DNA of 64,000 nt from Chrysemys picta bellii (GCF_011386835.1 NC_088803.1:12524001-12588000), one strand, 5' to 3'; shown: positions 3,312 to 51,349, numbered from the stretch's first letter. Notes: generated from the letters alone by a model not told the origin. Numbers and translations are program-made.

Positions 3312-3480
3312 CACCTGTGTGATCACACACTGGAGAAGTGCTCTGATTGTCAGAGGTGAGGAGCCCTCATGACTTCTAGTTAATGGAAGTGAAGAGTGCT
3401 GCGCTCCTTTGACATCCCTGAAATATTATTAAGATGAGAATCAGACTCATTCGATCTGTTACTCTAATTCTGACCTTTGT

Positions 3481-11889: not shown

Positions 11890-12849
11890 ATGTCCAATCA
11901 AACAACTGTGACCGAGTTCCTTCTCCTGGGATTCTCTGACATTCGGGAGCTGCAGATTTTACACTTTGTGGTGTTTCTGGTGATTTACCTAGCAGCCCTG
12001 ATGGGGAATCTTCTCATCATCACAGCCGTAGCCCTCGACCACCATCTTCACACCCCCATGTACTTCTTCCTGGTGAACCTGTCCATCCTAGACCTCAGCT
12101 CCATCTCTGTCACCATCCCCAAATCCATGGCCAATTCCTTGATGAACACGAGGTCAATTTCTTATTCTGGATGCGTCACACAAGTCTTTCTCTTTATCTT
12201 CTTTATTTCAGCAGATTTTGCATTATTGACTGTCATGGCATACGACCGACACATCGCCATCTGCCGACCACTGCACTATGCGACAGTGATGAACAGGAGA
12301 GCGTGTGTCGAAATGGCAGCAGGTGTGTGGATCAGTGGTATTCTTAACTCTGCACTGCACACTGGGAGCACATTCGTGATACCTTTTTGTGGAGGCAACA
12401 TGGTGGATCAGTTCTTCTGTGAAATCCCCCAGCTCCTCAAGCTCGCCTGCTCTGACTCAGACCTCAATGAAACTGTGGCTATTGTCTTCAGTGCATGCTT
12501 AGCCTTAAGCTGCTTTGTTTTCATAATTGTGTCATATGTTCAGATCTTCAAAGCAGTGCTGAAAATCCCCTCTGAGCAGGGCCGGCGTAAAGCCTTCTCC
12601 ACCTGCCTGCCTCACCTTACTGTGGTCTCCTTGTTTATTTGTACTGGGACTGTTGCCTACCTGAAACCGGCCTCCAGCTCAGCGTCAGGTCTGGATCTCA
12701 TGGTGGGTGTTCTCTATTCCGTGGTGCCACCAATGATGAATCCGATCATCTACAGCATGAGAAACAGGGAGGTGAAAGGTTCATTGAGTAAACTGATAGG
12801 TTGGAGGTTATTCCGCAAGAATAAAATGTCCATATGTCTCCACTTATAG
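11890..12849 (+). CDS. Olfactory receptor, OR14-like (type B, copy 1), 319 aa
   Basis: Intact ORF with LHTPMYFF, MAYDRHIAIC, KAFSTCLPH, NPIIYSMRN. Confidence 0.95.
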   Translation: MSNQTTVTEFLLLGFSDIRELQILHFVVFLVIYLAALMGNLLIITAVALDHHLHTPMYFFLVNLSILDLSSISVTIPKSMANSLMNTRSISYSGCVTQVFLFIFFISADFALLTVMAYDRHIAICRPLHYATVMNRRACVEMAAGVWISGILNSALHTGSTFVIPFCGGNMVDQFFCEIPQLLKLACSDSDLNETVAIVFSACLALSCFVFIIVSYVQIFKAVLKIPSEQGRRKAFSTCLPHLTVVSLFICTGTVAYLKPASSSASGLDLMVGVLYSVVPPMMNPIIYSMRNREVKGSLSKLIGWRLFRKNKMSICLHL

Positions 12850-12994
12850 CAATTTCATTCTGAGTTTCCTTATAAATATAATCAGCTGAATCTTTATGCA
12901 GTATTTGGTATTTGCATGTGTAAAAATCCGGACAAACATAACTCAAGAAAAATAAGAGTTACTTTAGCTTTACTCCAATGTAAATTAGATCAGA

Positions 12995-12996
<2 letters not shown>

Positions 12997-13050
<54 letters not shown>
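12997..13050. repeat. (CTAT)n microsatellite 3' of type-B OR
   Basis: Paralogous runs at 35094-35146 and 50718-50764. Confidence 0.95.
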
Positions 13051-13051
<1 letters not shown>

Positions 13052-13295
13052 ATAACCTTGCACATAAAATGAGTAGCCATAGCAAAGTCACTAGTGAGGT
13101 CTCTGGCTCTTATTTTTCAGGATTAAAACTCTGATCGAGGTATCAACGCATTTGTTCTTTGTGTGGCTTTTTGTTTCTTTTTTTTTCAGTTTTTTAATTT
13201 ATATTTGTGGAGTTGTTTGGTGCTTTTATTTGTTTCTTTGTTCCAGGTATGTTTAGAGGTGGGAAGTCCTGGAGAGATGGGGAGGGTTCGGTTAG

Positions 13296-13728: not shown

Positions 13729-15260
13729 ATCATAGAATCATAGAATATCAGGGTTGGAAGGGACCTCAGGAGGTCATCTAGTCCAACCCCCTGCTCAAAG
13801 CAGGACCAATCCCCAACTAATTCATCCCAGCCAGGGCTTTGTCAAGCCTGACCTTAAAAACCTCTAAGGCTACATCTTCACTACGAGGGGGGTTGATTTA
13901 AGATACGCAAATTCAGCTATGCGAGTAGCATAGCTGAATTCGACGTATCGCAGCCGACTTACCCCGCTGTAGGGACGGCGGCAAAATCGACCTCTGCGGC
14001 TTCCCATCAATGGCACTTACTCCCACCTACGCTGGTGGAGTAAGAGCGTCAATTCGGGGATCGATTGGCGCGTCCCATCGGGACGCGATAAATCGATCCC
14101 TGAGTGGTCAATTTCTACCCGCCGATTCAGGCGGGTAGTGTAGACCCAGCCTAAGGAAGGAGATTCCACCACCTCCCTAGGTAACACATTCCTTTACTTC
14201 ACCACTCTCCTAGTGAAAAACTTTTTCCTAATATACAACCTAGACCTCTCCCACTGCAATTTGAGACCATTACTCCTTGTTCTGTCATCTAGTACCATTG
14301 ACACCAGTCTAGATCCAACCTCTTTGGAAGCCCCTTTCAGGTAGTTGAAAGCAGCTATCAAATCCCCCCTCATTCTTCTCTTCCACAGAGTAGATAATCC
14401 CAGTTCCCTCAGCTTCTTCTCATAAATCATGTGCTCCAGCCCCCTAATCATTTTTATTGAACTCCGCTGGACTCTTTCTAATTTTTCCATATCTTTCTTG
14501 TAGTGTGGGGCCCAAAACTGAACACAGTAATCCAGACGAGGCCTCACCAATGCCGAATAGAGGGGAATGATTACGTCCTTCAATCTGCTGGCAATGCTCC
14601 TACTTATACAGCCCTAAATGTCTTCTTGGCAACAAGAGCACACTGTTGACACATATCCAGCTTCTCATCCACTGTAATCCCTAGGTCCTTTTCTGCAGAA
14701 CTGCTGCCTAGCCATTCGGTCCCTGGTCTGTAGCAGTGCATGGGATTCTTCCATCCTAAGTGCAGGACTTTGCACTTGTCCCTTTTGAACCTCAACAGAT
14801 TTCTTTTGGCCCAATCCTCTAATTTGTCTAGGTCCGTCTGTATCCTATCCCTACCCTCCAGCGTATCTACCACTCTTCCCAGTTTAGTGTCATCTTCAAA
14901 CTTTGTGAGGGTGGAATCCACCCCATCCTCCAGATCAGTAATGAAGATATTGAACAAAACTGGTCCCAAGACCGACTCTTGGGGCACTCCCCTTGATACC
15001 GGCTGCCAACTAAACATGGAGCCATTGATCACTACCCATTGAGCCTGATGATCTAGCCAGCTTTCTATCCACCTTATAGTCCATCCATCCAGCCCATACT
15101 TCTTTTATCTGGTGGCAAGAATACTGTGGGAGACCGTATCAAAAGCTTTGCTAAAGTCAAGGAATAACATGTCCACTGCTTTCCCCTCATCCACAGAGCC
15201 AGTTATCTCATCATAGAAGGCAATTAGGTTAGTCAGGCATGACTTGCCCTTGGTGAATCC
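13729..15260 (-). mobile_element. CR1 LINE, 5'-truncated, interrupted by a MITE
   Basis: (catagaat)n tail. ORF2 RT peptides GVPQESVLGPVLFNIFI..FEDDTKLG and [23 protein letters not shown]. Confidence 0.95.
13868..14151. mobile_element. PIF/Harbinger MITE (284 bp)
   Basis: TIRs ggctacatcttcacta / tagtgtagacccagcc, TAA TSD at 13865-67 and 14152-54, several internal hairpins. Confidence 0.85.
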
Positions 15261-15464
15261 GTACACATGGATACACATGGATAAATCCCCTTCCGTCAGC
15301 ATCAGTCCTTAAAAGCCAGTGATGTTCAAAGCCAGCTACACACAGTTCAGCTGCAGAGAGCAATGGGTTTGAATCTAGTTCTGACAGTTCGGTCTTAGAG
15401 TGAAGGATGAAAGGTCTTTTAGAAAGTTGTGCTTTTGGCTTCTAGATACTGTTAGAAGGTCTGA

Positions 15465-15465
15465 C

Positions 15466-15518
<53 letters not shown>
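15465..15518. repeat. (AGAT)n microsatellite
   Basis: Perfect run. Confidence 0.95.
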
Positions 15519-16109: not shown

Positions 16110-16543
16110 CAAAAAATGATCAGGGGGCTGGGGCACATGACTTATGAGGAGAGGCTGAGGTAACTGGGCTTGTTTAGTCTGCAGAAGAGAAGAGTGATGG
16201 AGGGATTTGACCTGAAGGGGGGTTCCAAGGAGGATGGAGCTAGGCTGTTTGTAGTGGCGGCAGATGACAGAATAAGGAGCAATGGTCTCAAGTTGAAATG
16301 TGGGAGGTCTAGGTTGGATATTAGGAAACACTACTTCAGTAGGAGGGTGGTGAAGCACTGGAATGGGTTACCAAGGGAGCTGGTGGAATCTCCATCCTTG
16401 GAAGTTTTTAAGGCCCAGCTTGACAAAGCCCTGGCTGGGATGATTTAGTTGGGGATTGGTCCTGCTTTGAGCAGGGGATTGGACTAGATACCTCCTGAGG
16501 TCGCTTCCAACCCTGATAGTCTCTGATTCTTCTATGATTCTAT
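16110..16543 (+). mobile_element. CR1 3' fragment
   Basis: Inserted at caaaggaaa|gtacagc (empty site at 10074-10090) with a gaaa duplication; tctatgattctat tail. Confidence 0.92.
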
Positions 16544-18654: not shown

Positions 18655-18814
18655 TTTTTACATTGATGTAAGCCTATATTAACTCCATTGACTGAAGTGT
18701 GTTTGTCTAGATATTTGCAAGTAAATACCCCAGTGTTCATAAGTAGACTGTGTGCTATATTCTCATGGAGCGAATAATGCCATCAGTTGATCATATTTAT
18801 AAAGAAACACAGAC

Positions 18815-19738
18815 TCAAAGGAGAAAGATGAACATTTAATTTTAGGAGAATGGACTCAATCCCATCATTTTGCACCGGGCAGCTTTGATCTTCTTGCTCC
18901 TCATGCTGTAGATGATTGGATTCATCACCTAAGGCACTGGGGAAAAATATGAGAACTAGACCTGATGTTTAGCTGCAGGTGGGTTTTAGGTAGGCTAAGA
19001 AGCCAATGCTAAGCAACAAGGAGATGACACAGAGGAGAGGAAGGCAGGTGGAGAAGGCTTTACCCCACCTCAGTGGGGATTCTCAGCACTGTTTTGAAGA
19101 TCTGAACATATGACACAATTATTAAAACAAAGCAGTTTAAGATTAAGCACACACTCAAGGCAATAGCTCCAGTTACACTGAGGTAGAAGTAAGAGCAGGT
19201 GAGCTTGAGTAGCTGGGGTATGTCACATAGGAAACGATTTATTACATTGCTTCCACAGAAAGATATTGCAAACGTGTTCCCAATGAGCATTGCAGAATTG
19301 AGAAGATCACTGATCCAGGCCCTGGCTGCCATTTAGATACAAGCTTTCATAGTGCAGCAGTTTCCAGATGGCGACGTATCGATCATATGCCATGATGGTC
19401 AGTAAGGCAACATCCGTTGAATTGAAGAAGATGAAGAGAAAGACTTAGGTGATGCATCCAGAATATGAAACCGACCTGGTGTTCAATTAGGAATTGGCCA
19501 TGGATTTGGGGATGATGACAGAGATGGAGCCGAGGTCTAGGATGGACAGATTCTTCAGGAAGAAGTACATGGGGGTGTGAAGATGGTTGTCGAGGACTAC
19601 AACCATGATGATGAGAAGAGTCCCCAGCAGGGCTTCCAGGTAAATCACCAGAAAGACCACAAAGTGCAAAAGCTGCAGCTCCCGAACATCAGAGAACCCC
19701 AGGAGAATGAACTCGGCCACGGTCGTTAGATTGGACAT
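18815..19738 (-). pseudogene. OR14-like pseudogene
   Basis: Starts MSNLTTVAEFILLGFS at 19738. Several in-frame TAA codons (after KSMANS and after GCIT), a deletion with frameshift after HYE, further indels in TM6, and a NPIIYSMR remnant near 18910. Confidence 0.93.
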
Positions 19739-20147
19739 TTTCCTTATCGGTACATTGTGTCCTCCCTGTGGAGGGAAGGAGATAGTCACTGGTCAGGATC
19801 AGTGTGACAATGGGAATGACCCTGATTCTCATCTTAATAACATCTCCTGATGTGCATGTCCAAGGTGCACAGTGCTCGTCTTTTCCACGGACTGGGAATC
19901 GTGAGTGCTCCTTGCCTCTGACAATCATACACATCAGGGTCATTATCACACTCATGTAAATTGGAATCGCTCTCTTAAAGTCAATGCAGCAGCATCATTT
20001 TACACCTTCTGGCCCAAGAGGCAGCTTGATAAAGATGCAGTGTGAAGGATGGACAAAGTACCACACAAATCTACCAGGTCCATACAGGAGGCATTGCCCT
20101 GTTGCTACAAAGAGTAGGGTCACAGCTTGTCATGAAACTATTGCATG

Positions 20148-20431: not shown

Positions 20432-21400
20432 TAAAGTACTAAAATGCCAGCACAGCCTGACTTCCACTTCCCGGGGAAATCTGACGGACTCCCCCAGCAT
20501 CCTAAGTGGCACTGGGTCTGTAATGATTCCACCTCAACACCAGGTAGAAAGCCTGCCACCTGGTTACACATTGAGTGATGGCCCCAAATCCCAGCCACAC
20601 GTCCATAGCTGAATCTGCTCTCCGGGGCTGTGAGCCCAGCTCTGATCTCACCTCTGGAGTACACCACTCTGACAACCTGCCCTAGTTAACCCTATCCCCG
20701 AAGAGGGGGAACACGGCCTGCCGTGGACCTCACACGATGACAACATCCCTGCAAGGATATAAAAAAGCCAGGGCTGCGGCTCAAAGGGTGTCCCTAGGTA
20801 TTTACAGGGTGTCCCTAGGTATTTGTAGCACAGACATGTGACCTACAATAGCTCAGAGCCCAGTAGCACCAGAACATCAGCTGGCCGGAAATAGACGGGT
20901 TCTTCATTAACCCCATGTAATTACCTCTAGGGGAAGCAAAGTTTTTTGGGGGGGAGAGGGAGGGGTGGCAGACATGTTGGGATGCATCCACCAGAGGAGC
21001 CGACAACTGAGGCTGCCCTGGGTGTTCAAAGTTGGTCATTAGGAGGTACCCAGGGGCAAACACTAAAAACTAAGGGCCAGACCATGAGCTGGTGTAAACT
21101 GACACAATTCTGTTGACTTCAGAGTAGGTAGGGATATTTTTGCCCACTAAGTATCTGGCCCTTTGATTTCAGTGGCACTATGGCTGATTTATGCCAGCTG
21201 GGGATCTGGTCTCTTACACAGTTTCAAATCCACTTTCTTTGCCTGTGAATTGAAATGGAAGAGGAGACAAAAGTTCCTAAACAGTCAGCACTTTCTCAGC
21301 TCTTTGTCCCATGGGATTCATTACAAGAGTGCAACTTATAATGGTTACGGAGCGAATCATTCCAACTAGGAACAGAACTTTGGATTTTCAACTTCAATTG

Positions 21401-21402
21401 GA

Positions 21403-21468
<66 letters not shown>
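21401..21468. repeat. (GAAA)n microsatellite
   Basis: Perfect run. Confidence 0.95.
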
Positions 21469-21469
<1 letters not shown>

Positions 21470-23564
21470 GAAAATGTCAGGCCATTCTTCCTAATAGAAG
21501 CTGATGATCTGAACACTGAACTCCAATCTCTGTCCGTAGAGGGAAAGAATCGCTCCTTAACCATTAAAAGTTCCACTCTTGTAATTAAGAACTAAGAACG
21601 TGCAGAGAGGTTTGAACTTCTGTTTCATCCTTGTTTTCAATTCACACACAAAGAATATGGATTTAAAATGTGCAATGGGCCAGATTCTCAGCTGGTGAAA
21701 ATCATCCAGAGCTTCATTGAAATCAAAGGGCCGGTACCCCAGTTGGCGAAAATATCCCTAACTATTCTGAAATCAATGGAACTGTATCAATTTACAACAG
21801 CTCAGGAGCTGGCCCTTAGTTTTTAGTGTCTGACTCTGGGTACCTCATCAAACAGCCACGTCACCCTGATCTCTGGATTCCTCTGATGAGATCAGAGTTG
21901 GGCTCACAGCCCTGGAGACCAGACTTAGTTATTTAACTCCAGAGCAGGAACATCCTTTTCTGTGCCAGTGTCTGAAATCTGCACAGGATCATTTCTAGAA
22001 TTGGGAGGGGCTTTCAGCCCATGACCCTATTTAGTTCATCTCCTCTCAGCCAAGCCTGCCGCAGGAGTGGAGCAGGGAGCGCCCATCTGTGGAGTGGATC
22101 CCTGTCTACTTGGAGCTGCCGAGAGACCCAGCAATGCAGGAAATCCACCAATGGAAAATGGAAACAGCTGCTGGATAATACAGTGATGAGGGTCTGGGAG
22201 AGAGAGAGCACTAAGAACCAAAGAATCCTGACTGTGGAGCACCAAATGCATGGGGAAATTTCTGCAAAGACCACCCCAGTAAGTTTGATATTTCAATTAA
22301 ATATTTTAGGGTATTAATATAAGAGTAAATTGAATAATATAAATGTGAATTATAGTTGGAACTCTTTAAGACTTTTATGATCAATTCAGTGAAACATCTA
22401 GAGCCAGTCAAGTCTTATTTTCTTTTCAGCAGAAAAAAATGACTTTTCATAGAAATTGTGAAAACTAAAATGTGTTTGGTTTCTGGCATGTGAGAACTAA
22501 ACAATTTCAGCTAAAAATGCTGAAAATAGAATGTTTTCAGCTGAAATAACAATACAAATATTTTCAGTTTTTCAAAGAACATAATATACCAAAAACCCAA
22601 TTTGCCTTTGAAATAATTCAAGCCAAAAATATCTGAGCACCGCTAGCTGGAAACTATCATGGGGAACAATAATATTGTCCAATCATGCCACAATTTTAAA
22701 CTCCGTGACTGAACTGCAACCATGTTTATTTCTGTTTCAAAGGGATAGTTGCAGGATGATAAAATTAAGTAAGCAATGAAGCTGGTAATCCACAGAATGT
22801 TTTAAACATATCAGCACCTTTAAATTGATGCACAGAGAGTTGAAGCCCCAGCCAAAGCTCGTCTATTATGACCCTGCCCAAGAACATAGAGGAGTTCAAT
22901 GGGACTAGATCCCAGACCTCCTGCTTGAACACCGTCCCACACTGCTGCCAGTTAAACAAAAATACTGTCAGTAGGTTCAAAGAACATCTGTCAATAGGTT
23001 CAAAGAACGCAAAAATACTGTCAATAGGTTCAAAGAACGCCTAGTAAGTCACAGTCCTAGTAGACACAGCAGAGAAAGGGAGGGAGGGGAAACAAAGGGA
23101 CAGGGAGGGGAAGTGACTGGCCTAAGGTCACACAGAAGGTCCGTGGCAGATCCTAGAGCAGAACCCAGGTCTGCTTTCAACGACTGACCCGCACAGCACA
23201 GACATAAAGGAGCAGGTGAAAGATACAACACAGCAGTAACTGAGCAATCCTCCGAGTCTGTCATTGCACAGAGATGGAAGTGCAGCTGGGATTTGTTGCC
23301 ATAAATCAATTTGTAACCAGGAATCAGGCCATTTTTATACAGAGATTGAGGTGCCATTTAGGACAATGGGTGATTCACGGTTGTATTTACCTGGAAAGTG
23401 GGAATCAGGTGATGTTGGCATTTTAGTTTCATGCCCAAGTTTGAAGCCTGCTGTTTGTTGCAATAGAGGGACCCTCTCTGCTGGGACAGTTTATCTTGGC
23501 TTGCACTTTATTACATCCTTCATACTGAATTTTATCAAGTTGTTACCCCAGAATTTGACAGTAC

Positions 23565-25122: not shown

Positions 25123-25337
25123 CACCTGTGTGATCACACACTGGAGAAGTGCTCCAATTGTCGGAGGTGAGGAGCCCTCATGACTTCTATCAAAGGAAGT
25201 GAAGAGTGTTGTGCTCCTTTGATATTCATGAGATATTATTAAGATGAGAATCAGAGTCATTTGATCTGTTACTCTAATTCTGACCATTGTCCTTGCTCTT
25301 CCCTCTACAGGCAGGACAAAGTGTACTGAGAAGAAAA

Positions 25338-31297: not shown

Positions 31298-33964
31298 TCC
31301 TACACAGGGGATTGACTACAGGATCATAACATCCCTTTTTTGCTTTCAAATCTATGAATCTGTAAACTTTTCCCTGTGGGTCTCTGCTGCTGAGCTGTGC
31401 AGGGCTCGAGGGAGTAAAATACACATGGATAAATCACCTTCCCTCAGCATAGGTCCTTGAATGAGAGTGAGGGTCAAAGCCAGCTGTGCAGAGCTCATCT
31501 GCTGAGAGCAACGGGTTGGAATCAAATACAGTTTTAGAGTGAGGGATGAAAGGACTCTTAGAAAGTTGTGCCTCTGCTTGTAGATACTACTTGACAGTCA
31601 GACAGCGCTGGACTGTGTGAATCACATATTAGGAAAATATCCTCAAATCCACAGTAAGTTTTCTCATTCAATTTAATTTGCCTGAAGGTTAACATCCGGG
31701 GTAGATTAAGAACAGTAATAAGAATTACAATCAGATGTCCTTTACATTTTCCTACCAATTTACTCATCTGCGGCTGGTCAGAAAATAATTAAAAGAATAA
31801 AATAAAAAATTCCCCCTACAAACAATTAAAGCTTTTCATCAACAAGCCAAAACCCATTTTCCTTCAGTGTTTGGCATCTGAAAACTTTCATCTTAAAAAT
31901 GAAAATTTCAAGAAGAAAACCTAACAAGGTTGTTTTTTGAGATTTCAGTTTTCCAACAAAAGGTCACAAACTTTTGAGGAAAGCTGATGCATTCTGAAGG
32001 GAAAATATGGGGTTTTGATAAAATCCCATATTTTCCATTAAGTATGAAAATTTCGAAGAAACCTTAAACTTTAAACAAGAGAAGGAAAAGTTAATGTTGT
32101 TTAATAATATATAATTAGAAACCCCTTTCATTCTCTGGCATCTCTGTTTATTTCTTTTTCAAAGGAAAGTACAGCAAGGTTACTGACATAGCTGATAGGT
32201 GTCATACACACTAGCCCCTTTACACAGGGTTAGAGTTGTACAAGCAGCCAAAGCCTGTCTACCTGGACACAACCCCTGGCCATAGAGGGGGTCAATAGAA
32301 CCAGAACACCAACCTCCTGGTTTAGCAATGTGTCCAGCGTACAACACTGTTGCCAGCTGACCACAGGTGCTGTAAATGGGTGCACTAACCATACACATGC
32401 TAAGATACAGTCCATCCCCAAAAGAGCTTACAGTCAAGTAGAGACGGCAGAGAAAGGGAGGGGAAACTGATGCACAGAGAGGGGAAGTGACTGGTACCGT
32501 ATCACAACAGGTCAGTGCCAGAGCCAAGAAAAAAACATGTCCTCTGACTGCCACTGAATCACACAGCACAGACCTAAAGTCACAGTGGGAAACAATACAA
32601 CATGCAAGTAACTGACCACTGCTACTAGTCCATCATTAAATAGATATTCAGAGATTCACAGAGTCAATGGCCAGAAGGAATTAGTGTGACCATCTAATCT
32701 GTCTTCCTGTATATTGTAGGCCAGCAAACTTCCCCCAAAATAATTCCTAGAGCAGATCTGTTAGAGAAAGACTCAATCTTGGTTTGAAAAGTCTCAGTGA
32801 TGGAGAATTCACCACAATCCCTGTAAATTGTTCCATTGGTTAATCACTCTCACTGTTAAAAAATTATGTTTTATTTCTAGTCTGAATTTGTCTAGCTTCA
32901 AATACAGCTATTGGATCATATTAGACCTTTCTCTGGTAGATTTAAGAGCCCATTATTAAATATTTGTTCCCCCTCTAGATAGTTATAGGCTGCCCTCGAG
33001 TCACCCCTTAATCTTCCCTTTCTTAGGTTACATAGACTAAGCTCATTGAGGGTCTCCCTACAAATCATGTTTTCTAATCATTTAATCTTTCTTGTGGCTT
33101 TTCTCTGAACCATCTACAATTTATCAATATCTTTCCTGAATTTTGGAAACTAGAACTGGACACCATATTCCATCAATGGTCACACCAGTCCCAAATGGTA
33201 ACCTCTCCACTCATATTCAAGATTCCCCTGTTTATGCACCCCAGATCTCATTAGCTACTGGTCACACTGGGAGTTCATGTTTAGCTGATTATCCATCACG
33301 ACCCCAAAATTGTTTTCTGTCACTGCTTCCCAGGATAATGTCCCCCATCCTATAAATATGGTCTATATTCCTTGTTTGCAATATGAAGTGCGGGTGCAGC
33401 TGGGATTGGGTGCCATAAATCAGTGTGTACCCAGGTAGTAGACAGCTGTTTGGTGTTGGGGTAAAATCAATACGGAAGGTCTACCCCCACAGAATGCTGG
33501 GTGAGTCCTTGTCATATTTCCCGGGAAAGTGGGAAACAGGTTGTGTTGGTGTTGTACTATTTTATTGTAATGCTCAATAGGTGAGCCTTAAAATTGTAGT
33601 AGTAGGGGATCCAACTTGGCTGGTATTTAGATTTTGGATATAGTTTGTTCCATCCTTCATACTGCATTTATCAAGCCACCTCATGGGCCTATTCCTCAGA
33701 TTGGGTAAAGTGATGAAGCTCTGTTGACTTTAAAGGAGCCAATCCAATTTACACAACTGTGATAACACTATTGAATGATTGTCAGAGGTGAGGAGCACTA
33801 ACATCACCAAGTCATTGTAAGTGATGAGTGCTGGGCACCTTTGACATTCATACAATCAGATATTAGGGGAAGGGGAATCAGGGCCATTCTCTCTGTCACT
33901 CTAATTCTGACCATAACCTTTCTCATTCCCTCCACAGGCATCACACAACATACTGAGGAAGAAA

Positions 33965-42589: not shown

Positions 42590-43618
42590 ACACTCTCCTT
42601 TAATCTCATTTATATTATATGCACAAATATGGTAGTAATAATAACAGTAACAATAAGTAGCCAGCTTCTGTGATCCAGGGCATGTTTTGTCACTTTTGGA
42701 TCCTTGTGGGATAAACCACCCTTGGCCAAATCCAGATCCCTTTAAAGTAAATGGCTAAATCCTAGTTGTTATGGTTACAGGGCTAGTTGCATCTCTGACC
42801 CCTTCGGATTTGTGCTTCATGCCTACACATTTCATAGGGTAGAAACTCATGATTCTTCCACTTTTATACCCAGACCCAGGCTACAGCACCCAGTGCACCA
42901 ACCATGGTCTGATTGGGTTTGGGTCCTGCAGTTCTTCCCACAGAGCTGTGACCAATTGTAAGTTGAGTGACCAGCTGGTCTTTTCCAAAGTATAATTTAC
43001 TTAGCACAGCAGGAACAAAGAAAATTGTGCTCAGACACATCACTACTAACAGACTAAAACACCATCATTTGAACAGAAACTCAGCCATCCCTATACCTAC
43101 AGAAATTCTTTCCCATCTCCTGATCAGCATGGGAATTAAAAGTTGAGCTGTCTTGAACTCCCCTCCACCCCATGAAAGGCATGACACACTGACACCCTCA
43201 ATACAAGGAGAGAACAACAAAGAAAGAGGGGAAAAGACACATGCTTTTAAGCAAACATACCCCACCCTCTTCAATTCACAGAAAACAGACCAACCAGCAA
43301 AACAAATCAAGGAACAGAGGCAATCAAGCAAATAAAACATCTCTTATCCCAAACATAAATTTTACCCCTCCCCTCAAAAAAGAGATGAGCCAGAGAGTAG
43401 ATGAAGTTGACTAATGGCTTTGCCATAGCTACTGATTTAATGTGTATGGTGCTCTGATGATGTAGTGATGGTAGCCATATAAATACTTAAGATGGATTAA
43501 TAGATAGGTTCGGATCTTATTTACACTGTTTAATTCTACAGTAACTCCACTGACTTCAGTGGAATTAGTCTGGACTTTAATCACTACATAAACACATTGC
43601 AGGTGATTTCCCCATGGA

Positions 43619-43671
43619 AAGAATATTTCCATCAGTTGAATGTAGCTATAATGAAACACAGAATAAAATGA
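43619..43671. repeat. 53-bp inverted repeat, left arm (OR 3' UTR)
   Basis: 49/53 identical to the reverse complement of 44689-44741. Confidence 0.92.
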
Positions 43672-43674
43672 CAG

Positions 43675-44631
43675 TCACAGGAGAAAGACAAACATATTAT
43701 TCTTGGTGAATAACTTCCACACAGTCAGCCTCCTCAGGGCAGCTTTGATCTCCTTGTTCCTCATGCTGTAGATGACTGGATTCATCATTGGAGGCACCAC
43801 AGAATACAGAACAGCCACCACTAGATCCAGCCCTGATGCTGAGCTGGAGGTAGGTTTCAGGTGGGCAAAGGTTCCAGTGCAAAAGAACAAGGAGACCACA
43901 GTGAGGTGAGGGAGACAGGTGGAGAAGGCTTTACGCTGGCCCTGCTCAGAGGGGATTCTCAGCACTGTCATGAAAATGTGAACATATGACACAATGATTA
44001 AAGCAAAGCAGCTTAATAGCAAACATGCACTAAAGCCAAGAATGCCAATTTCACTGAGGTATGAGTCAGAGCAGAAGAGCTTGAGTAGCTGGGGGATTTC
44101 ACAGAAGAACTGGTTGATGACATTGGACTGGCAGAAGGGTAACCTGAAGGTGTTTCCAGTGTGCAGGGCAGAGTACAGAATGCCACTTGTCCAGGCACTG
44201 GCTGCCATTTGGACGCAAGCACCCCTGTTCATCACTGTCTCATAGTGCAGTGGTTGGCAGATGGCGACGTATCTGTCGTACGCCATGACAGTGAGTAAAG
44301 CAATATTGGCTGCAGCAAAGAAGACAAAGAGAAAGACTTGAGTGATGCATCCAGCATAGGAAATTGACCTAGTGTTCAATAAGGAGTTGGCTATGGATTT
44401 GGGGACAATGACAGAGATGGATCCGAGGTCTAGGATGGACAGATTAATCAGGAAAAAATACATGGGTGTGTGAAGATGGTGGTCGAGCGCTACAGCTGTG
44501 ATGATGAGAAGATTCCCAATTAAGGCTGCCAGGTAAATTACCAGAAACACCACAACATGTAAAATCTGCAGTTCTCGGACATCAGAGAATCCCAGGAGAA
44601 GGAACTCAGTCACTGTAGTTTGGTTGGACAT
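43675..44631 (-). CDS. Olfactory receptor, OR14-like, 318 aa
   Basis: Intact ORF with MAYDRYVAIC, KAFSTCLPH, NPVIYSMRNKE. Confidence 0.95.
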   Translation of the reverse strand: MSNQTTVTEFLLLGFSDVRELQILHVVVFLVIYLAALIGNLLIITAVALDHHLHTPMYFFLINLSILDLGSISVIVPKSIANSLLNTRSISYAGCITQVFLFVFFAAANIALLTVMAYDRYVAICQPLHYETVMNRGACVQMAASAWTSGILYSALHTGNTFRLPFCQSNVINQFFCEIPQLLKLFCSDSYLSEIGILGFSACLLLSCFALIIVSYVHIFMTVLRIPSEQGQRKAFSTCLPHLTVVSLFFCTGTFAHLKPTSSSASGLDLVVAVLYSVVPPMMNPVIYSMRNKEIKAALRRLTVWKLFTKNNMFVFLL

Positions 44632-44688
44632 TTTCTTCCTCAGTTCATTGTGTCCTGCCTGTGCAAGGAAGAATAAAGTCTATGGTCA

Positions 44689-44741
44689 TCATTTTACTCT
44701 GTGTTTCATTATAGCTATATTCAACTGCTGAAAATATTCTT
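44689..44741. repeat. 53-bp inverted repeat, right arm (OR intron, next to acceptor)
   Basis: 49/53 identical to the reverse complement of 43619-43671. Confidence 0.92.
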
Positions 44742-45284
44742 CAATAATATCTCATGATGTGACTGTCACAGGAGTACTGCACTCATCAGTTCCATGACCA
44801 GGTCTGGTGAATGCTCCTTTCTCCTGACAATCAGACCATGAGTCAAGTGCATTATCGCACCAGTGTAAATTGGCATTGCTCCCAGTGTTGCTGGGTCATT
44901 TTTCACCATCAGAGGATCTGGCCCAAGAGTTGGCTCGATGAAATGTAGTATAAAGGCTGGAACAAATTACAACCTAAACCCAAAACTGCTAACAATGGTC
45001 CCTCTATTCTAAGAAATAGCCAGCTGGCAACTTGGGCATGAAACTGAGGTCCTAGAATATGCCAACATAGCCTGATTCCCACTTGCCGAGGCTACATCCA
45101 GCTTGTCTGTTATGATTCCACCACAACAGCATGTCAATGGCCTGCTGCTCAGTTACAAACTGGTTTACACTGTGCTTCCATCGGCATGGCATGACAATCT
45201 AGCTTGGAGAATTGATCGCTCCTAGGTGGTTGTGTTCACCTCTGTGAATTTAGGTCTGTGATGTGGCTCATTTGCCATCAGTAC

Positions 45285-49768: not shown

Positions 49769-50162
49769 CTCCAGCTCAACCTCCACCCTGGGGGAGAATA
49801 TAGGAAATCACAGCTGCACATACACTGACCTGTGAGAGACACGGTTGGTGTATGGGTTTGTGAAATGGAAATGACTGTTCTTTCTCCTTCAAATGTTCTT
49901 TTCCCATTATTTATTAATTTTTATTCAGTTATAAATGTGTCTATTTGCATGCGTATGGCATAAAGGCTTTTTTGGAAACATTTTTTCTTTATTAGTTAAC
50001 ATCTCTTAGTCATTATAAGTGACAAGTGCTGGGCACCTATGACAGTCATACAATGAGATATTAGGGAGAGGGGAAACAGGGCCATTCCCTCTGTTGCTTT
50101 AATCCTGACCATAACCCTTTTCATTCCCTCCACAGCCATCACACAATGTACTGAGGAAGAAA

Positions 50163-50466
50163 ATGTCCAACTGAACCACCGTGGCCAGTTCCTTCTCCTG
50201 GGATTCTCTGATGTTCGGGTGCTGCAGATTTTGCACTTTGTGGTGTTCCTGGTGATTTACCTGGCAGCCCTAATGGGGAATCTTCTCATCATCACAGCCG
50301 TAGCCCTGGACCACCGTCTTCACATCCCCATGTACTTCTTCCTGATTAATCTATTCATCCTAGACCTCGGCTCCATCTCTGTCCGTGTCCCCAAATCCAT
50401 GGCCAATTCTCTCAGGAATACCAAGTTAATTTCTTATTCTGGATGCATTGCCCAAGTCTTTTTTTT
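50163..50466 (+). pseudogene. 5'-only OR14-like pseudogene (type-B-like flanks)
   Basis: ATG TCC AAC TGA (stop at codon 4), a 1-nt frameshift, then LHIPMYFF...SGCIAQVF, truncated by a Penelope-like end at 50471. Confidence 0.92.
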
Positions 50467-50470
50467 TTCT

Positions 50471-50601
50471 GGATGCATCTGAAGAAGTTTGGTTTTTACC
50501 CATGAAAGCTTATGCCCAAATAAATCTGTTAGTCTTTAAGGTCCCACCAGACTCCTTGTTGTTTTTGTAGATACAGACTAACATGGCTACCTCCTGATAC
50601 T
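50471..50601. mobile_element. Penelope-like pLTR fragment with hammerhead core
   Basis: gcatCTGAAGAa...catGAAAgcttatgc; ends ggctacctcctgatac; no TSD. Confidence 0.75.
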
Positions 50602-50714
50602 TGATAGTATTCATTGTATAATTTACACTAGTAAAAATCTGGACAAACATACCTCAAGAAAAAATGTAATTACTACAAAGGTACTATACATATATCAATG
50701 TAATTAAGATTGGA

Positions 50715-50764
<50 letters not shown>

Positions 50765-51125
50765 GATGTACTGCTACCCATCTCCATACTATCTGAGAAC
50801 ATTGCACATAAAATCAGTAGCCATAGCAAAGTCCCTAGTCTCTTCTTATTATTCAGGATAAAAATTCTGATTGAGGTATCAAAGCATTTTTTCATTGTGT
50901 TTTTGTTTGTTTGTCAGATTTTTAGTTTATATTTCTGTAGTAGTTTGTTATTTTTATTTGTATCTCTGTTCCAGTTGGGTTTGGAGGTGGGAAGGCCTGG
51001 TGATATAATGAGTGTTTGATTAGACAGGATTTTCTATCTTTGTCCTCTCTTGAGAGTGCCCATATATCATCTCTTTGATGTGGTTTTCTGAGCAAACTGA
51101 AGGTTAGCTCCACAGAGTGATAAAA

Positions 51126-51349
51126 AGTATCAGGGGGTAGCCGTGTTAGTCTGTATCTACAAAACCAACAAGGAGTCTGGTGGGACCTTAAAGATTAACA
51201 GATTTATTTGGGCATAAGCTTTCGTGATGCATCCACTTCTCACTTCTTCGGATGCATCCAAAGAAGTGAGGTTTTTACTCACGAAAGCTTATGCCCAGAT
51301 AAATCTGTTAGTCTTTAAGGTGCCACCAGACTCCTTGTTGGTTTTGTAG
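51126..51349. mobile_element. Penelope-like pLTR insertion, head-to-head inverted
   Basis: 9-bp TSD gtgataaaa (51117-25 / 51350-58); inverted arms 51157-51250 and 51258-51349. Confidence 0.8.

What the first reader, a model, noticed from the sequence alone, without database searches (positions are those of the whole stretch)
43619..44741. Intact OR coding exon bracketed by a 53-bp inverted repeat made from its own 3' UTR
Seen: 43619-43671 and 44689-44741 are inverted copies (49/53 identical). On the OR pre-mRNA two of the four mismatches are G-U, giving 51/53 paired. One arm starts 3 nt after the stop codon; the other ends about 29 nt before the acceptor AG; the loop is about 1017 nt. The 3' arm is ancestral, being homologous to the 3' flanks at about 18780-18814 and 12850-12890. 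The intron arm replaces about 40 nt that in paralogs carries the ctctaat branch-like site. Short microhomologies (aaga, tgac) sit at the junctions. No other paralog here has it. Inference: a microhomology-mediated template switch. Possible consequences are an intron/3' UTR duplex hiding the branch point, back-splicing or A-to-I editing, or a substrate for inversion of the whole coding exon.
Basis: partly seen in the sequence, partly recalled or inferred. Interest (0 to 1): 0.75.

Follow-up and report, generated by a model that had tools for sequence, protein, structure and literature searches.

The report
Ancient template-switch scar around turtle smell-receptor gene
A painted-turtle smell-receptor gene really is bracketed by a 53-base inverted copy of the start of its own 3' UTR, but the copy is a very old DNA copying accident, shared by seven other hard-shelled (cryptodire) turtle species, that has since drifted like junk DNA, so it is a neat mutational fossil rather than a working device.

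Summary
Window 43619-43671 and 44689-44741 are inverted copies, 49/53 identical. On the sense RNA 51/53 positions pair (duplex -67.7 kcal/mol). They bracket an intact 318-aa olfactory receptor (OR) gene on the minus strand.

The polarity is also correct. The 3' arm is homologous to paralogue 3' flanks and to the same site in a side-necked turtle. The upstream arm is an inserted reverse-complement copy.

The event is not recent or private. The window is Chrysemys picta bellii. Both arms sit at the same place in Trachemys, Malaclemys, Terrapene, Mauremys, Pangshura, Gopherus (two gene copies) and Macrochelys, and in contigs of four independent sequencing runs. The Emydura orthologue lacks the upstream arm. 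So the copy arose after the side-necked/hidden-necked split and before the pond-turtle/snapping-turtle split.

Since then the arms have evolved at the neutral rate: tree length 0.298 against 0.309 for flanks, and 30 parsimony steps against 31.9 expected. Pairing has decayed as a neutral simulation predicts. The adjacent 57 nt (branch site, pyrimidine tract, AG, leader) evolve at one third of that rate.

Verdict: a single long-range (about 1 kb) template switch or templated repair insertion, now a neutral scar. No sign of inversion was seen, back-splicing lacks a downstream donor, and no RNA data were available. Low to moderate interest.

The parts
43619..43671 (-). 3' arm, the source copy: the first 4-56 nt of the 3' UTR after the stop codon. 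Ancestrally the pairing extended one more base, to 43618.
   Evidence: homologous to paralogue 3' flanks; homologous to the 3' flank of the Emydura orthologue, which has no upstream arm. The nearest ATTAAA signals lie 94, 141 and 234 nt after the stop, so the arm lies inside any 3' UTR.
43675..44631 (-). Intact olfactory receptor coding sequence (318 aa, OR14-like by the names sources give its relatives), forming most of the 1017-nt loop.
   Evidence: ORF. (7tm_4, E = 1.2e-48). (relatives named OR14A16/14I1-like). Orthologues are intact in eight species. CDS tree length is 0.210 against 0.309 for flanks.
44632..44658 (-). Inferred 27-nt 5' leader of the coding exon, between the acceptor and the ATG.
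   Evidence: The acceptor-like cacag|GCAGGAC is conserved in all paralogues and all orthologues. There are 3 parsimony steps in 27 sites against 8.1 expected. No RNA evidence.
44659..44688 (-). Inferred intron end: TGAC branch-like site (A at 44686, 27 nt before the G of the AG), pyrimidine tract, and AG at 44660-44659.
   Evidence: TGACCATAG...CACAG is kept in every orthologue including Emydura. There are 3 steps in 30 sites against 9.0 expected. Together with the leader: 6 steps in 57 sites against 17.1, P = 0.0019.
44689..44741 (-). Upstream arm, the derived copy: a reverse complement of the 3' UTR start inserted into the conserved upstream region. It stands in place of 36 nt relative to paralogues.
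   Evidence: the flanks GAGATATTATT and TGACCATAG are collinear with paralogues and with Emydura, and the segment between them is replaced. It is present at the same site in eight cryptodire species and in a Gopherus duplicate. It is absent from Emydura.

Best explanation
One mutational event in an early hidden-necked (cryptodire) turtle created the repeat. It happened after the split from side-necked turtles and before the split of pond turtles/tortoises from snapping turtles.

The inferred mechanism is as follows. A growing DNA 3' end left its template in the region just upstream of this OR gene's coding exon. It re-primed about 1.07 kb away, on the start of the gene's own 3' UTR. It copied about 50-54 nt in reverse-complement orientation and then returned to, or was joined to, the original site. 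One junction shows 2-4 nt of microhomology (AA to AAAG) and the other 0-1 nt. This is a long-range template switch or templated repair insertion of the FoSTeS/MMBIR or polymerase-theta kind. Replication error and break repair cannot be told apart from sequence.

The copy left the TGAC branch-like site, the pyrimidine tract and the AG intact. The gene stayed functional, and the repeat has since been carried passively. Both arms accumulate substitutions at the neutral rate and pairing erodes as chance predicts. The arms still look 92% complementary only because turtle DNA evolves very slowly (about 0.04 substitutions per site from the crown node to Chrysemys).

Shown: the repeat, its polarity, its phylogenetic distribution, and its neutral rate and neutral loss of pairing. 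Inferred: the enzymology, and that the upstream arm lies in a transcribed intron.
For: - The repeat is real and non-random.
- Polarity comes from paralogues and from the Emydura orthologue. Emydura keeps the 3' source (80% match) but has no upstream arm. It still shows paralogue-like AAAGGGAATCA at that site.
- The upstream arm preserves older states of the 3' flank. At 43642/44718 it keeps the T seen in paralogues and Emydura, while the 3' arm has changed to C.
- The arms are present at the same position in Trachemys, Malaclemys, Terrapene, Mauremys, Pangshura, Gopherus and Macrochelys, and in a Gopherus duplicate.
- They are also present in contigs of four independent runs.
- ML tree length: arms 0.298, flanks 0.309, CDS 0.210.
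- Fitch steps: arms 30 in 106 sites against 31.9 expected (P = 0.41). The adjacent 57 nt show 6 steps against 17.1 expected (P = 0.0019).
- A neutral HKY simulation from the 50/52-paired ancestor gives a Watson-Crick sum of 362.5 +/- 8 against 358 observed. For WC+GU it gives 375 +/- 7 against 379 observed, P = 0.25-0.32.
- The arms are at single-copy depth in four genomes (table 2).
- Published models describe exactly this signature: replacement of a segment by the reverse complement of a nearby one (PMC5453318), and microhomology or imperfect 'microhomeology' at templated insertions that persist as germline variants (PMC8421209).
Against: - The source lies about 1 kb from the insertion. Published short-range scans search only 100-200 bp (PMC5453318), and yeast MMBIR insertions use templates within 100 bp (PMC8421209). 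The event therefore sits between the short-range and long-range classes.
- One junction has almost no microhomology.
- One complete compensatory path exists: A-U to G-U in the geoemydid stem, then G-C in Mauremys. One pair-restoring change exists in Malaclemys.
- Wobble-preserving changes weakly favour the sense strand over the antisense strand (P = 0.05-0.07). A slight RNA-level constraint is therefore not excluded.
- No RNA data exist to show that the upstream arm is transcribed, or that splicing is normal.
Confidence: 0.85

Rival explanations
1. The intron/3' UTR duplex is a functional RNA structure kept by selection. It would modulate splicing of the last intron, recruit ADAR, or tune expression of this receptor.
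For: - The 53-bp helix is predicted in both the minimum-energy and the centroid fold, with duplex energy -67.7 kcal/mol.
- It abuts the TGAC branch-like site by 0-2 nt.
- It is retained in eight species.
- There is one full compensatory change and one restoring change.
- Wobble changes favour the sense strand, P = 0.05-0.07.
Against: - The arms evolve at the flank rate: 0.298 against 0.309, and 30 steps against 31.9 expected.
- About 18 substitutions break pairs, and a 2-nt deletion in Testuguria bulges the helix.
- Total pairing equals the neutral expectation.
- Complementarity is already down to 80-84% in Macrochelys, Gopherus and Mauremys, and below the detection settings in Pangshura.
- Retention alone is expected, given about 0.04-0.08 substitutions per site since the crown node.
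Confidence: 0.07
2. The arms are terminal inverted repeats of a DNA transposon or MITE that captured or flanks the coding exon.
For: The geometry (two inverted ends about 1.1 kb apart) resembles a small DNA element. A multi-copy repeat does lie nearby, at 43504-43607.
Against: - The 3' arm is homologous to ordinary 3' flanks of paralogues and of Emydura.
- There is no target-site duplication: the outer flanks CATGGA and CAATAA differ.
- The arm bins sit at single-copy depth in four genomes.
- Sequence outside and inside the upstream arm is collinear with paralogue upstream regions.
Confidence: 0.02
3. The repeat is a footprint of an inversion of the exon with staggered breaks, or it acts as a recombination substrate that flips the exon.
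For: Inverted duplications are known to flank inversions made by staggered breaks (own knowledge). The arms bracket the whole exon.
Against: - The exon is collinear with both outer flanks in all paralogues and in all nine arm-bearing loci, as well as in the arm-less Emydura locus.
- No strand-changing joints appear in four runs (table 5).
- The longest perfect identity block is 20 bp. This is far below the roughly 200 bp usually needed for efficient homologous recombination in vertebrate cells (own knowledge).
Confidence: 0.02
4. The upstream arm was copied from the 3' flank of a different, closely related paralogue (ectopic conversion or a templated insertion in trans), not from the gene's own 3' UTR.
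For: Templated insertions can use distant or trans templates (PMC5453318, PMC8421209). Turtle genomes hold hundreds of OR14-like genes.
Against: - The arm shares focal-lineage-specific states with the gene's own 3' flank (TAGCTA and ATTCAACTG, where paralogues have TAAATA and AATCA), and matches in-window paralogues at only about 76-78%.
- At the crown node only 2 of 54 positions differed, and one of those is a later change in the 3' arm itself.
Confidence: 0.05

Closest known systems
Template-switch mutations, four-point model (Loytynoja and Goldman 2017, PMC5453318; RNA hairpins created by template switching, PMC8794818)
   Same: A contiguous segment is replaced by the reverse complement of a nearby segment in one event, creating a new inverted repeat or hairpin. 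The ancestral state is recoverable from an outgroup.
   Different: The source is about 1.07 kb away, whereas published scans search 100-200 bp around the cluster. At 50-54 nt the copied tract is well above that scan's 10-bp minimum for the copied fragment (PMC5453318). The loop is a whole coding exon rather than a short spacer.
FoSTeS/MMBIR templated insertions (Osia et al. 2021, PMC8421209)
   Same: An inverted templated insertion at the site of a small deletion. There is microhomology or imperfect 'microhomeology' at the junctions. Such events persist as neutral germline variants.
   Different: In the yeast system that paper builds on, templates lay within 100 bp. Here one junction has 0-1 nt of perfect microhomology. 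There is no associated copy-number change or complex rearrangement.
Polymerase-theta / synthesis-dependent MMEJ templated insertions (PMC2943611, PMC4912351, PMC7165422; found in a literature search, abstracts only)
   Same: A deletion plus a templated insertion that can be in reverse-complement orientation (snap-back synthesis), primed from a few bases of homology.
   Different: By my own knowledge such insertions are usually a few to about 30 nt and templated close to the break. A 50-nt copy from 1 kb away is atypical.
Exon-flanking inverted repeats that drive circular RNA formation, and exon/intron complementary sequences that guide ADAR editing (own knowledge)
   Same: Long-range complementary arms bracket an exon in the primary transcript. 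The 53-bp helix length is adequate for either process.
   Different: The downstream arm lies in the 3' UTR of a terminal exon with no known downstream splice donor, so back-splicing has no substrate. Both arms are non-coding, so editing would not recode. The evolutionary pattern is neutral.

Membership tests
Template-switch mutation (four-point model) | The derived segment equals the reverse complement of a nearby ancestral segment, as one contiguous tract | tested here: met
   53-54 nt contiguous; 49/53 identical now and 52/54 at the crown node.
Template-switch mutation (four-point model) | An ancestral (pre-event) state at the target is shown by an outgroup | tested here: met
   Paralogues and the Emydura orthologue lack the arm and share a different sequence at that site.
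Template-switch mutation (four-point model) | Short range: the source lies within about 100-200 bp of the target, as in published scans | tested here: not met
   There are 1017 nt between the arms.
MMBIR-type templated insertion | Microhomology of 2-12 nt at both junctions | tested here: inconclusive
   Left junction: 2-4 nt (AA to AAAG), depending on the unknown pre-event sequence. Right junction: 0-1 nt perfect, or 4/5 imperfect against an Emydura-like target (criteria).
DNA transposon / MITE with terminal inverted repeats | Target-site duplication and multiple genomic copies | tested here: not met
   No direct repeat flanks the arms. The arms are at single-copy depth in four runs. The 3' arm is homologous to ordinary gene flanks.
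circRNA-promoting flanking inverted repeats | Both arms lie in introns flanking an exon that has a downstream 5' splice site | tested here: not met
   The 3' arm starts 3 nt after the stop codon, inside the terminal exon's 3' UTR. No donor is known downstream. RNA was not available to test this directly.
Structured RNA element under selection | Reduced substitution rate and/or an excess of pair-preserving changes relative to neutral expectation | tested here: not met
   Rate 0.298 against 0.309. Steps 30 against 31.9 expected. Pairing matches the neutral simulation, P = 0.25-0.74. Rfam gave no hit in the window.
Olfactory receptor (7tm_4) | Pfam 7tm_4 match above the curated cut-off and an intact ORF of about 310-320 aa | tested here: met
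   166.7 bits against a cut-off of 27. The ORF is 318 aa.

The most novel reading that the evidence does not exclude
The 53-bp intron/3' UTR helix is weakly maintained on the sense transcript. It would delay removal of the last intron, or attract ADAR, in olfactory neurons, giving this one receptor an unusual post-transcriptional control that has persisted since the early cryptodires. The hints are the single A-U to G-U to G-C compensatory path, the pair-restoring change in Malaclemys, and the sense-over-antisense wobble bias (P about 0.05-0.07).
Probability: 0.07. Interest if true: 0.55.

Novelty: new member of a known kind. Interest (0 to 1): 0.25.

Why it matters
This is a clean template-switch or templated-insertion event, resolved nearly to the base at its junctions. 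Its source is about 1 kb from its target, a distance that genome-wide scans for such mutations do not search (they look within 100-200 bp).

It can be dated on a phylogeny. Both junctions and both arms can be followed through eight species and through a later gene duplication.

It also carries a caution. In slowly evolving genomes such as those of turtles, a 92%-complementary 53-bp helix around an intact gene can be very old and entirely neutral. Striking complementarity and retention across species are not evidence of function there.

It says nothing new about how olfactory receptors are regulated.

Tried and rejected
- **Chance or artefact.** Rejected: E = 4.5e-18, four independent runs and nine assemblies.
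- **Transposon ends.** Rejected: no target-site duplication, single-copy depth, and homology to ordinary flanks.
- **Inversion footprint or flip substrate.** Rejected by collinearity in all loci and by the absence of strand-changing joints.
- **Rfam scan of the whole window.** No family found.
- **RNA evidence.** No run on record as RNA holds the locus. The four listed RNA-guess runs of organism B hold next to none of its words, so expression, splicing, editing and circular forms could not be tested.
- **Early reading, corrected.** I first took the organism-E state at 44728 to be ancestral. The wider phylogeny shows it is a derived, pair-restoring change, as in Malaclemys.
- **Pelodiscus (P0023) and Eretmochelys (P0059) hits.** I fetched them hoping for softshell and sea-turtle orthologues. 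They match only at paralogue level (76-78%, similarity confined to the gene and its near flanks) and are uninformative.
- **First neutral simulation.** A first iqtree call failed on its thread setting and was rerun.
- **Earlier-findings search.** A search for similar repeats around other OR genes of this genome found none.

Full report
**1. The observation**

The arms are 43619-43671 and 44689-44741: 53 nt, 92% complementary, with 1017 nt between them. Within the 64-kb window the pair scores E = 4.5e-18 by blastn.

The loop holds an intact 318-aa ORF on the minus strand, 43675-44631. It matches Pfam 7tm_4 at 1.2e-48. The stop codon is 43675-43677, and 3 nt separate it from the arm. The upstream arm ends 28 nt before an AG at 44660-44659.

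The four mismatches are 43629/44731, 43632/44728, 43642/44718 and 43663/44697. On the sense RNA two of them are G-U, so 51/53 positions pair, with a duplex energy of -67.7 kcal/mol. The minimum-energy and centroid folds of the 1181-nt pre-mRNA both contain the long-range helix.

None of the other six OR genes or pseudogenes in the window has a comparable flank-to-flank inverted match; the best is E = 0.02. Rfam finds nothing in the window.

**2. Polarity**

Aligned in gene orientation, the 3' flank of the focal gene is homologous to the 3' flanks of the paralogues at 11890+, 33965+ and 18764-. The 3' arm is therefore ordinary, ancestral 3' UTR sequence.

Upstream, the focal gene is collinear with its paralogues on both sides of the arm (GAGATATTATT before it; TGACCATAG, the pyrimidine tract and CACAG|GCAGGAC after it). 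Between these, 36 nt of paralogue sequence are replaced by the inverted copy.

The upstream arm shares focal-specific states with the gene's own 3' flank (TAGCTA and ATTCAACTG). It matches the paralogue flanks at only about 76-78%. The source was therefore this gene's own 3' UTR.

**3. Who else has it**

The exact protein is encoded on a 55.6-Mb contig of assembly GCA_011386835.2.

The word-based protein search gave a clear orthologue series above the paralogue background of 82% identity or less:
- Trachemys and Malaclemys (same 90% cluster)
- Macrochelys (same cluster)
- Terrapene, 93%
- Mauremys, 90%
- Gopherus and Pangshura, 88%
- Emydura, 85%

I fetched each locus with 1.5 kb of flanks. 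The flanks align over nearly the whole 3.9 kb, so the loci are orthologous. Emydura aligns collinearly over about 3.7 kb at 72-77%, whereas paralogues lose similarity within a few hundred bases of the gene.

The upstream arm sits at the same position, with the same right junction (and a left junction differing only by a later substitution), in all seven other cryptodires.
- Complementarity is 91-92% over 53-54 nt in the four emydids.
- It is 84% over 43 nt in Mauremys and Gopherus.
- It is 80% over 54 nt in Macrochelys.
- It falls below the detection settings in Pangshura.
- A second Gopherus gene (P0015), closest to the Gopherus orthologue at 92.6%, carries both arms too. The repeat therefore passed through a later gene duplication.

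Emydura, a side-necked turtle, has the 3' source sequence but no upstream arm. At that site it keeps AAAGGGAATCA, which matches the paralogues' pre-event sequence.

Independently, contigs of four public runs from organisms B, D, E and G span each arm with its flanks. Identity is 100% in B and 97.5-99% in the others, and there are no strand-changing joints.

On the published turtle tree, Pleurodira and Cryptodira are sister groups. Durocryptodira is Testudinoidea plus Americhelydia, the latter including the snapping turtles. Crown Testudines was fixed at 220 Ma (bioRxiv 10.1101/2021.10.14.464421). The event therefore falls after the pleurodire/cryptodire split and before the Durocryptodira crown. 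I did not read a date for that crown node. Pelodiscus and Eretmochelys hits proved to be paralogues and do not narrow the bracket.

**4. History of the mismatches**

At the crown node only two positions were unpaired.
- 43642/44718: the 3' arm changed T to C, while the upstream arm, the paralogues and Emydura keep T. The copy is thus a fossil of the older 3' UTR.
- 43632/44728: the change is in the upstream arm, either a copying error or an early substitution.
- 43629: A to G in the 3' arm, on the testudinoid stem.
- 44697: A to G (sense strand) in the upstream arm, on the deirochelyine stem.

Both of the last two give G-U on the sense RNA. The 54th pair (43618/44742) also became G-U in deirochelyines.

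**5. Is anything maintaining it?**

Three tests say no.
1. Maximum-likelihood tree length on the fixed species tree is 0.298 substitutions per site for the arms. It is 0.309 for 1463 flanking non-coding sites and 0.210 for the CDS.
2. Fitch parsimony gives 30 steps in 106 arm sites against 31.9 expected at the flank rate (P = 0.41). In contrast, the 57 nt between the arm and the ATG (TGAC, pyrimidine tract, AG, leader) show 6 steps against 17.1 expected (P = 0.0019). Constraint is detectable right next to the arm but not in it.
3. I evolved the reconstructed ancestor (50 of the 52 gap-free pairs) along the flank-derived branch lengths under HKY. The summed Watson-Crick count is 362.5 +/- 8 against 358 observed. 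Sense-strand WC+GU is 375 +/- 7 against 379 observed (P = 0.25-0.32).

By my reading of the alignment printed:
- about 18 substitutions break pairs;
- about 10 transitions keep a wobble pair;
- one change restores a pair (Malaclemys);
- one full compensatory path exists (A to G in the geoemydid stem, then T to C in Mauremys);
- a 2-nt deletion bulges the helix in Testuguria.

The only oddity is a slight excess of wobble-preserving changes on the sense strand relative to the antisense strand (P = 0.05-0.07). I do not regard this as significant.

The high present-day complementarity follows from the slow turtle rate. The path from the crown node to Chrysemys is about 0.04 substitutions per site, which predicts about 8% arm-to-arm divergence. 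The observed figure is 7.5%.

**6. The gene survived**

The ORF is intact in all eight species and in the Gopherus duplicate. In Macrochelys the alignment shows a 2-column gap in the CDS, and the ORF is 27 nt longer, running into the 3' arm (327 aa). I take this to be a frameshift near the C-terminus.

Under neutrality, an ORF of this length would stay open with probability of about 0.01-0.3 over the relevant divergence in a single lineage (the indel rate was assumed). Retention in nine copies, together with the reduced CDS rate, shows that the insertion is compatible with function.

**7. Branch point and junctions**

That is true relative to paralogues. However, Emydura, which lacks the arm, also lacks that 27-nt stretch and has an intact gene.

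A second conserved motif, (C/A)TGAC, fits the CURAY branch consensus at least as well (own knowledge of the consensus). It lies 27 nt before the AG and is kept in every paralogue and orthologue. So what was replaced is uncertain: 36 nt if the pre-event site was paralogue-like, about 6 nt if it was Emydura-like.

The ancestral left junction reads ATTATT|AAAGAAT. It shares AA to AAAG with the target, depending on the unknown pre-event sequence. At the right junction the copy ends in ATGA and the target resumes with TGACC. TGA is duplicated rather than shared, giving an overlap of 0-1 nt, or a 4/5 imperfect match (AATgA against AATcA) to an Emydura-like target.

**8. Mechanism**

The signature is a small deletion replaced by a contiguous reverse-complement copy of nearby sequence, with short microhomology at one junction. 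This is the signature of template switching (four-point model, PMC5453318) and of MMBIR-type or polymerase-theta-type templated insertions (PMC8421209; PMC2943611, PMC4912351 and PMC7165422 by abstract).

The 1-kb distance exceeds the 100-200 bp searched in published short-range scans and the 100-bp template distance in yeast. It is much shorter than classical FoSTeS jumps.

The event could be a leading-strand end switching to exposed lagging-strand template about 1 kb behind the fork. It could be a displaced nascent strand folding back during break-induced or synthesis-dependent repair. It could be a resected break end. Sequence alone cannot decide between these.

**9. The proposed consequences**

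- Back-splicing needs a 5' splice site downstream of the exon. The 3' arm lies in the terminal exon's 3' UTR, ahead of the ATTAAA signals at +94, +141 and +234, so there is no substrate.
- Inversion is unlikely. The longest perfect block is 20 bp. All nine arm-bearing loci and four runs show the same orientation.
- A-to-I editing or slowed splicing remains physically possible if the upstream arm is transcribed. Both arms are non-coding, the evolutionary record shows no constraint, and no RNA data were available.
- That the upstream region is an intron is itself an inference. It rests on the conserved and constrained acceptor-like sequence.

**10. Verdict**

The age, the microhomology details and the branch-point claim are corrected. 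The functional speculations are not supported.

It is a new, well-dated example of a known kind of mutation. It is notable mainly for its 1-kb reach and for how long it has stayed legible in a slowly evolving genome.

Noticed in passing
L011:1391-1443 and 2461-2511 (Gopherus evgoodei, protein P0015): A second tortoise OR gene, closest to the Gopherus orthologue (92.6% over 3.3 kb), carries both arms at the same positions. The repeat was inherited through a later gene duplication, and both copies kept an open reading frame.
   Followed up: partly
L008:1501-2484 (Macrochelys suwanniensis, P0122): The alignment shows a 2-column gap in the snapping-turtle CDS. Its ORF ends 27 nt later than in the other species, so it reads into the 3' arm (327 aa instead of 318). 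I take this to be a frameshift near the C-terminus.
   Followed up: partly
window 44873-44932 (L001:1200-1259): A 60-nt block about 240-300 nt upstream of the ATG evolves at 0.39 of the flank rate across eight turtles. It may be a promoter element or part of a 5' exon. It was picked from about 70 sliding windows, so it is not statistically secure.
   Followed up: no
window 33760-33775, 25130-25145 and 3320-3335 (approximate; alignment A1, columns 250-265): Three paralogues have a strong donor-like CAGAG|GTGAGG about 165 nt upstream of the acceptor. The focal gene and all its orthologues have GAGAAAGG or GGGAAAGG there, with no GT. If that motif is a real 5' splice site, the focal lineage must use a different upstream exon.
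   Followed up: no
window 43504-43607: This stretch of the 3' flank is covered at 10-13 times single-copy depth in four genomes, with many contigs branching off at 43540 and 43574. It contains a 25-nt hairpin-like inverted repeat (43529-43553 / 43556-43580) that the repeat finder also reports in Terrapene, Malaclemys, Trachemys and Macrochelys. It is probably a fragment of a dispersed repeat.
   Followed up: no
window 50501-50602 / 51125-51226 and 51157-51227 / 51279-51349: Nested inverted repeats of 102 nt (95%) and 71 nt (96%) lie just beside an OR fragment at 50106-50467. They could be a transposon or another fold-back event.
   Followed up: no
window 21043-21846; 13734-14342 with 16210-16530; 12995-13052 with 15452-15518: Three features: an 800-nt near-palindrome (nested arms at 78-83%); a pair of long inverted segments (up to 190 nt, 81-93%) about 2-2.7 kb apart; and oppositely oriented (GATA)n tracts downstream of the OR at 11890-12849. 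Together they suggest inverted duplication or inverted transposon copies in that interval.
   Followed up: no
window 18764-20064 (minus) and 50106-50467 (plus): Two further OR14-like copies give no ORF of 200 aa or more: a full-length pseudogene at 73% identity to the focal locus, and a 360-nt 5' fragment at 83%.
   Followed up: no
window 43581: The first ATTAAA after the stop codon (94 nt downstream) is changed (sense A to G at its first base) in organisms D, E and G of the sequencing runs. It is therefore unlikely to be the conserved poly(A) signal.
   Followed up: no
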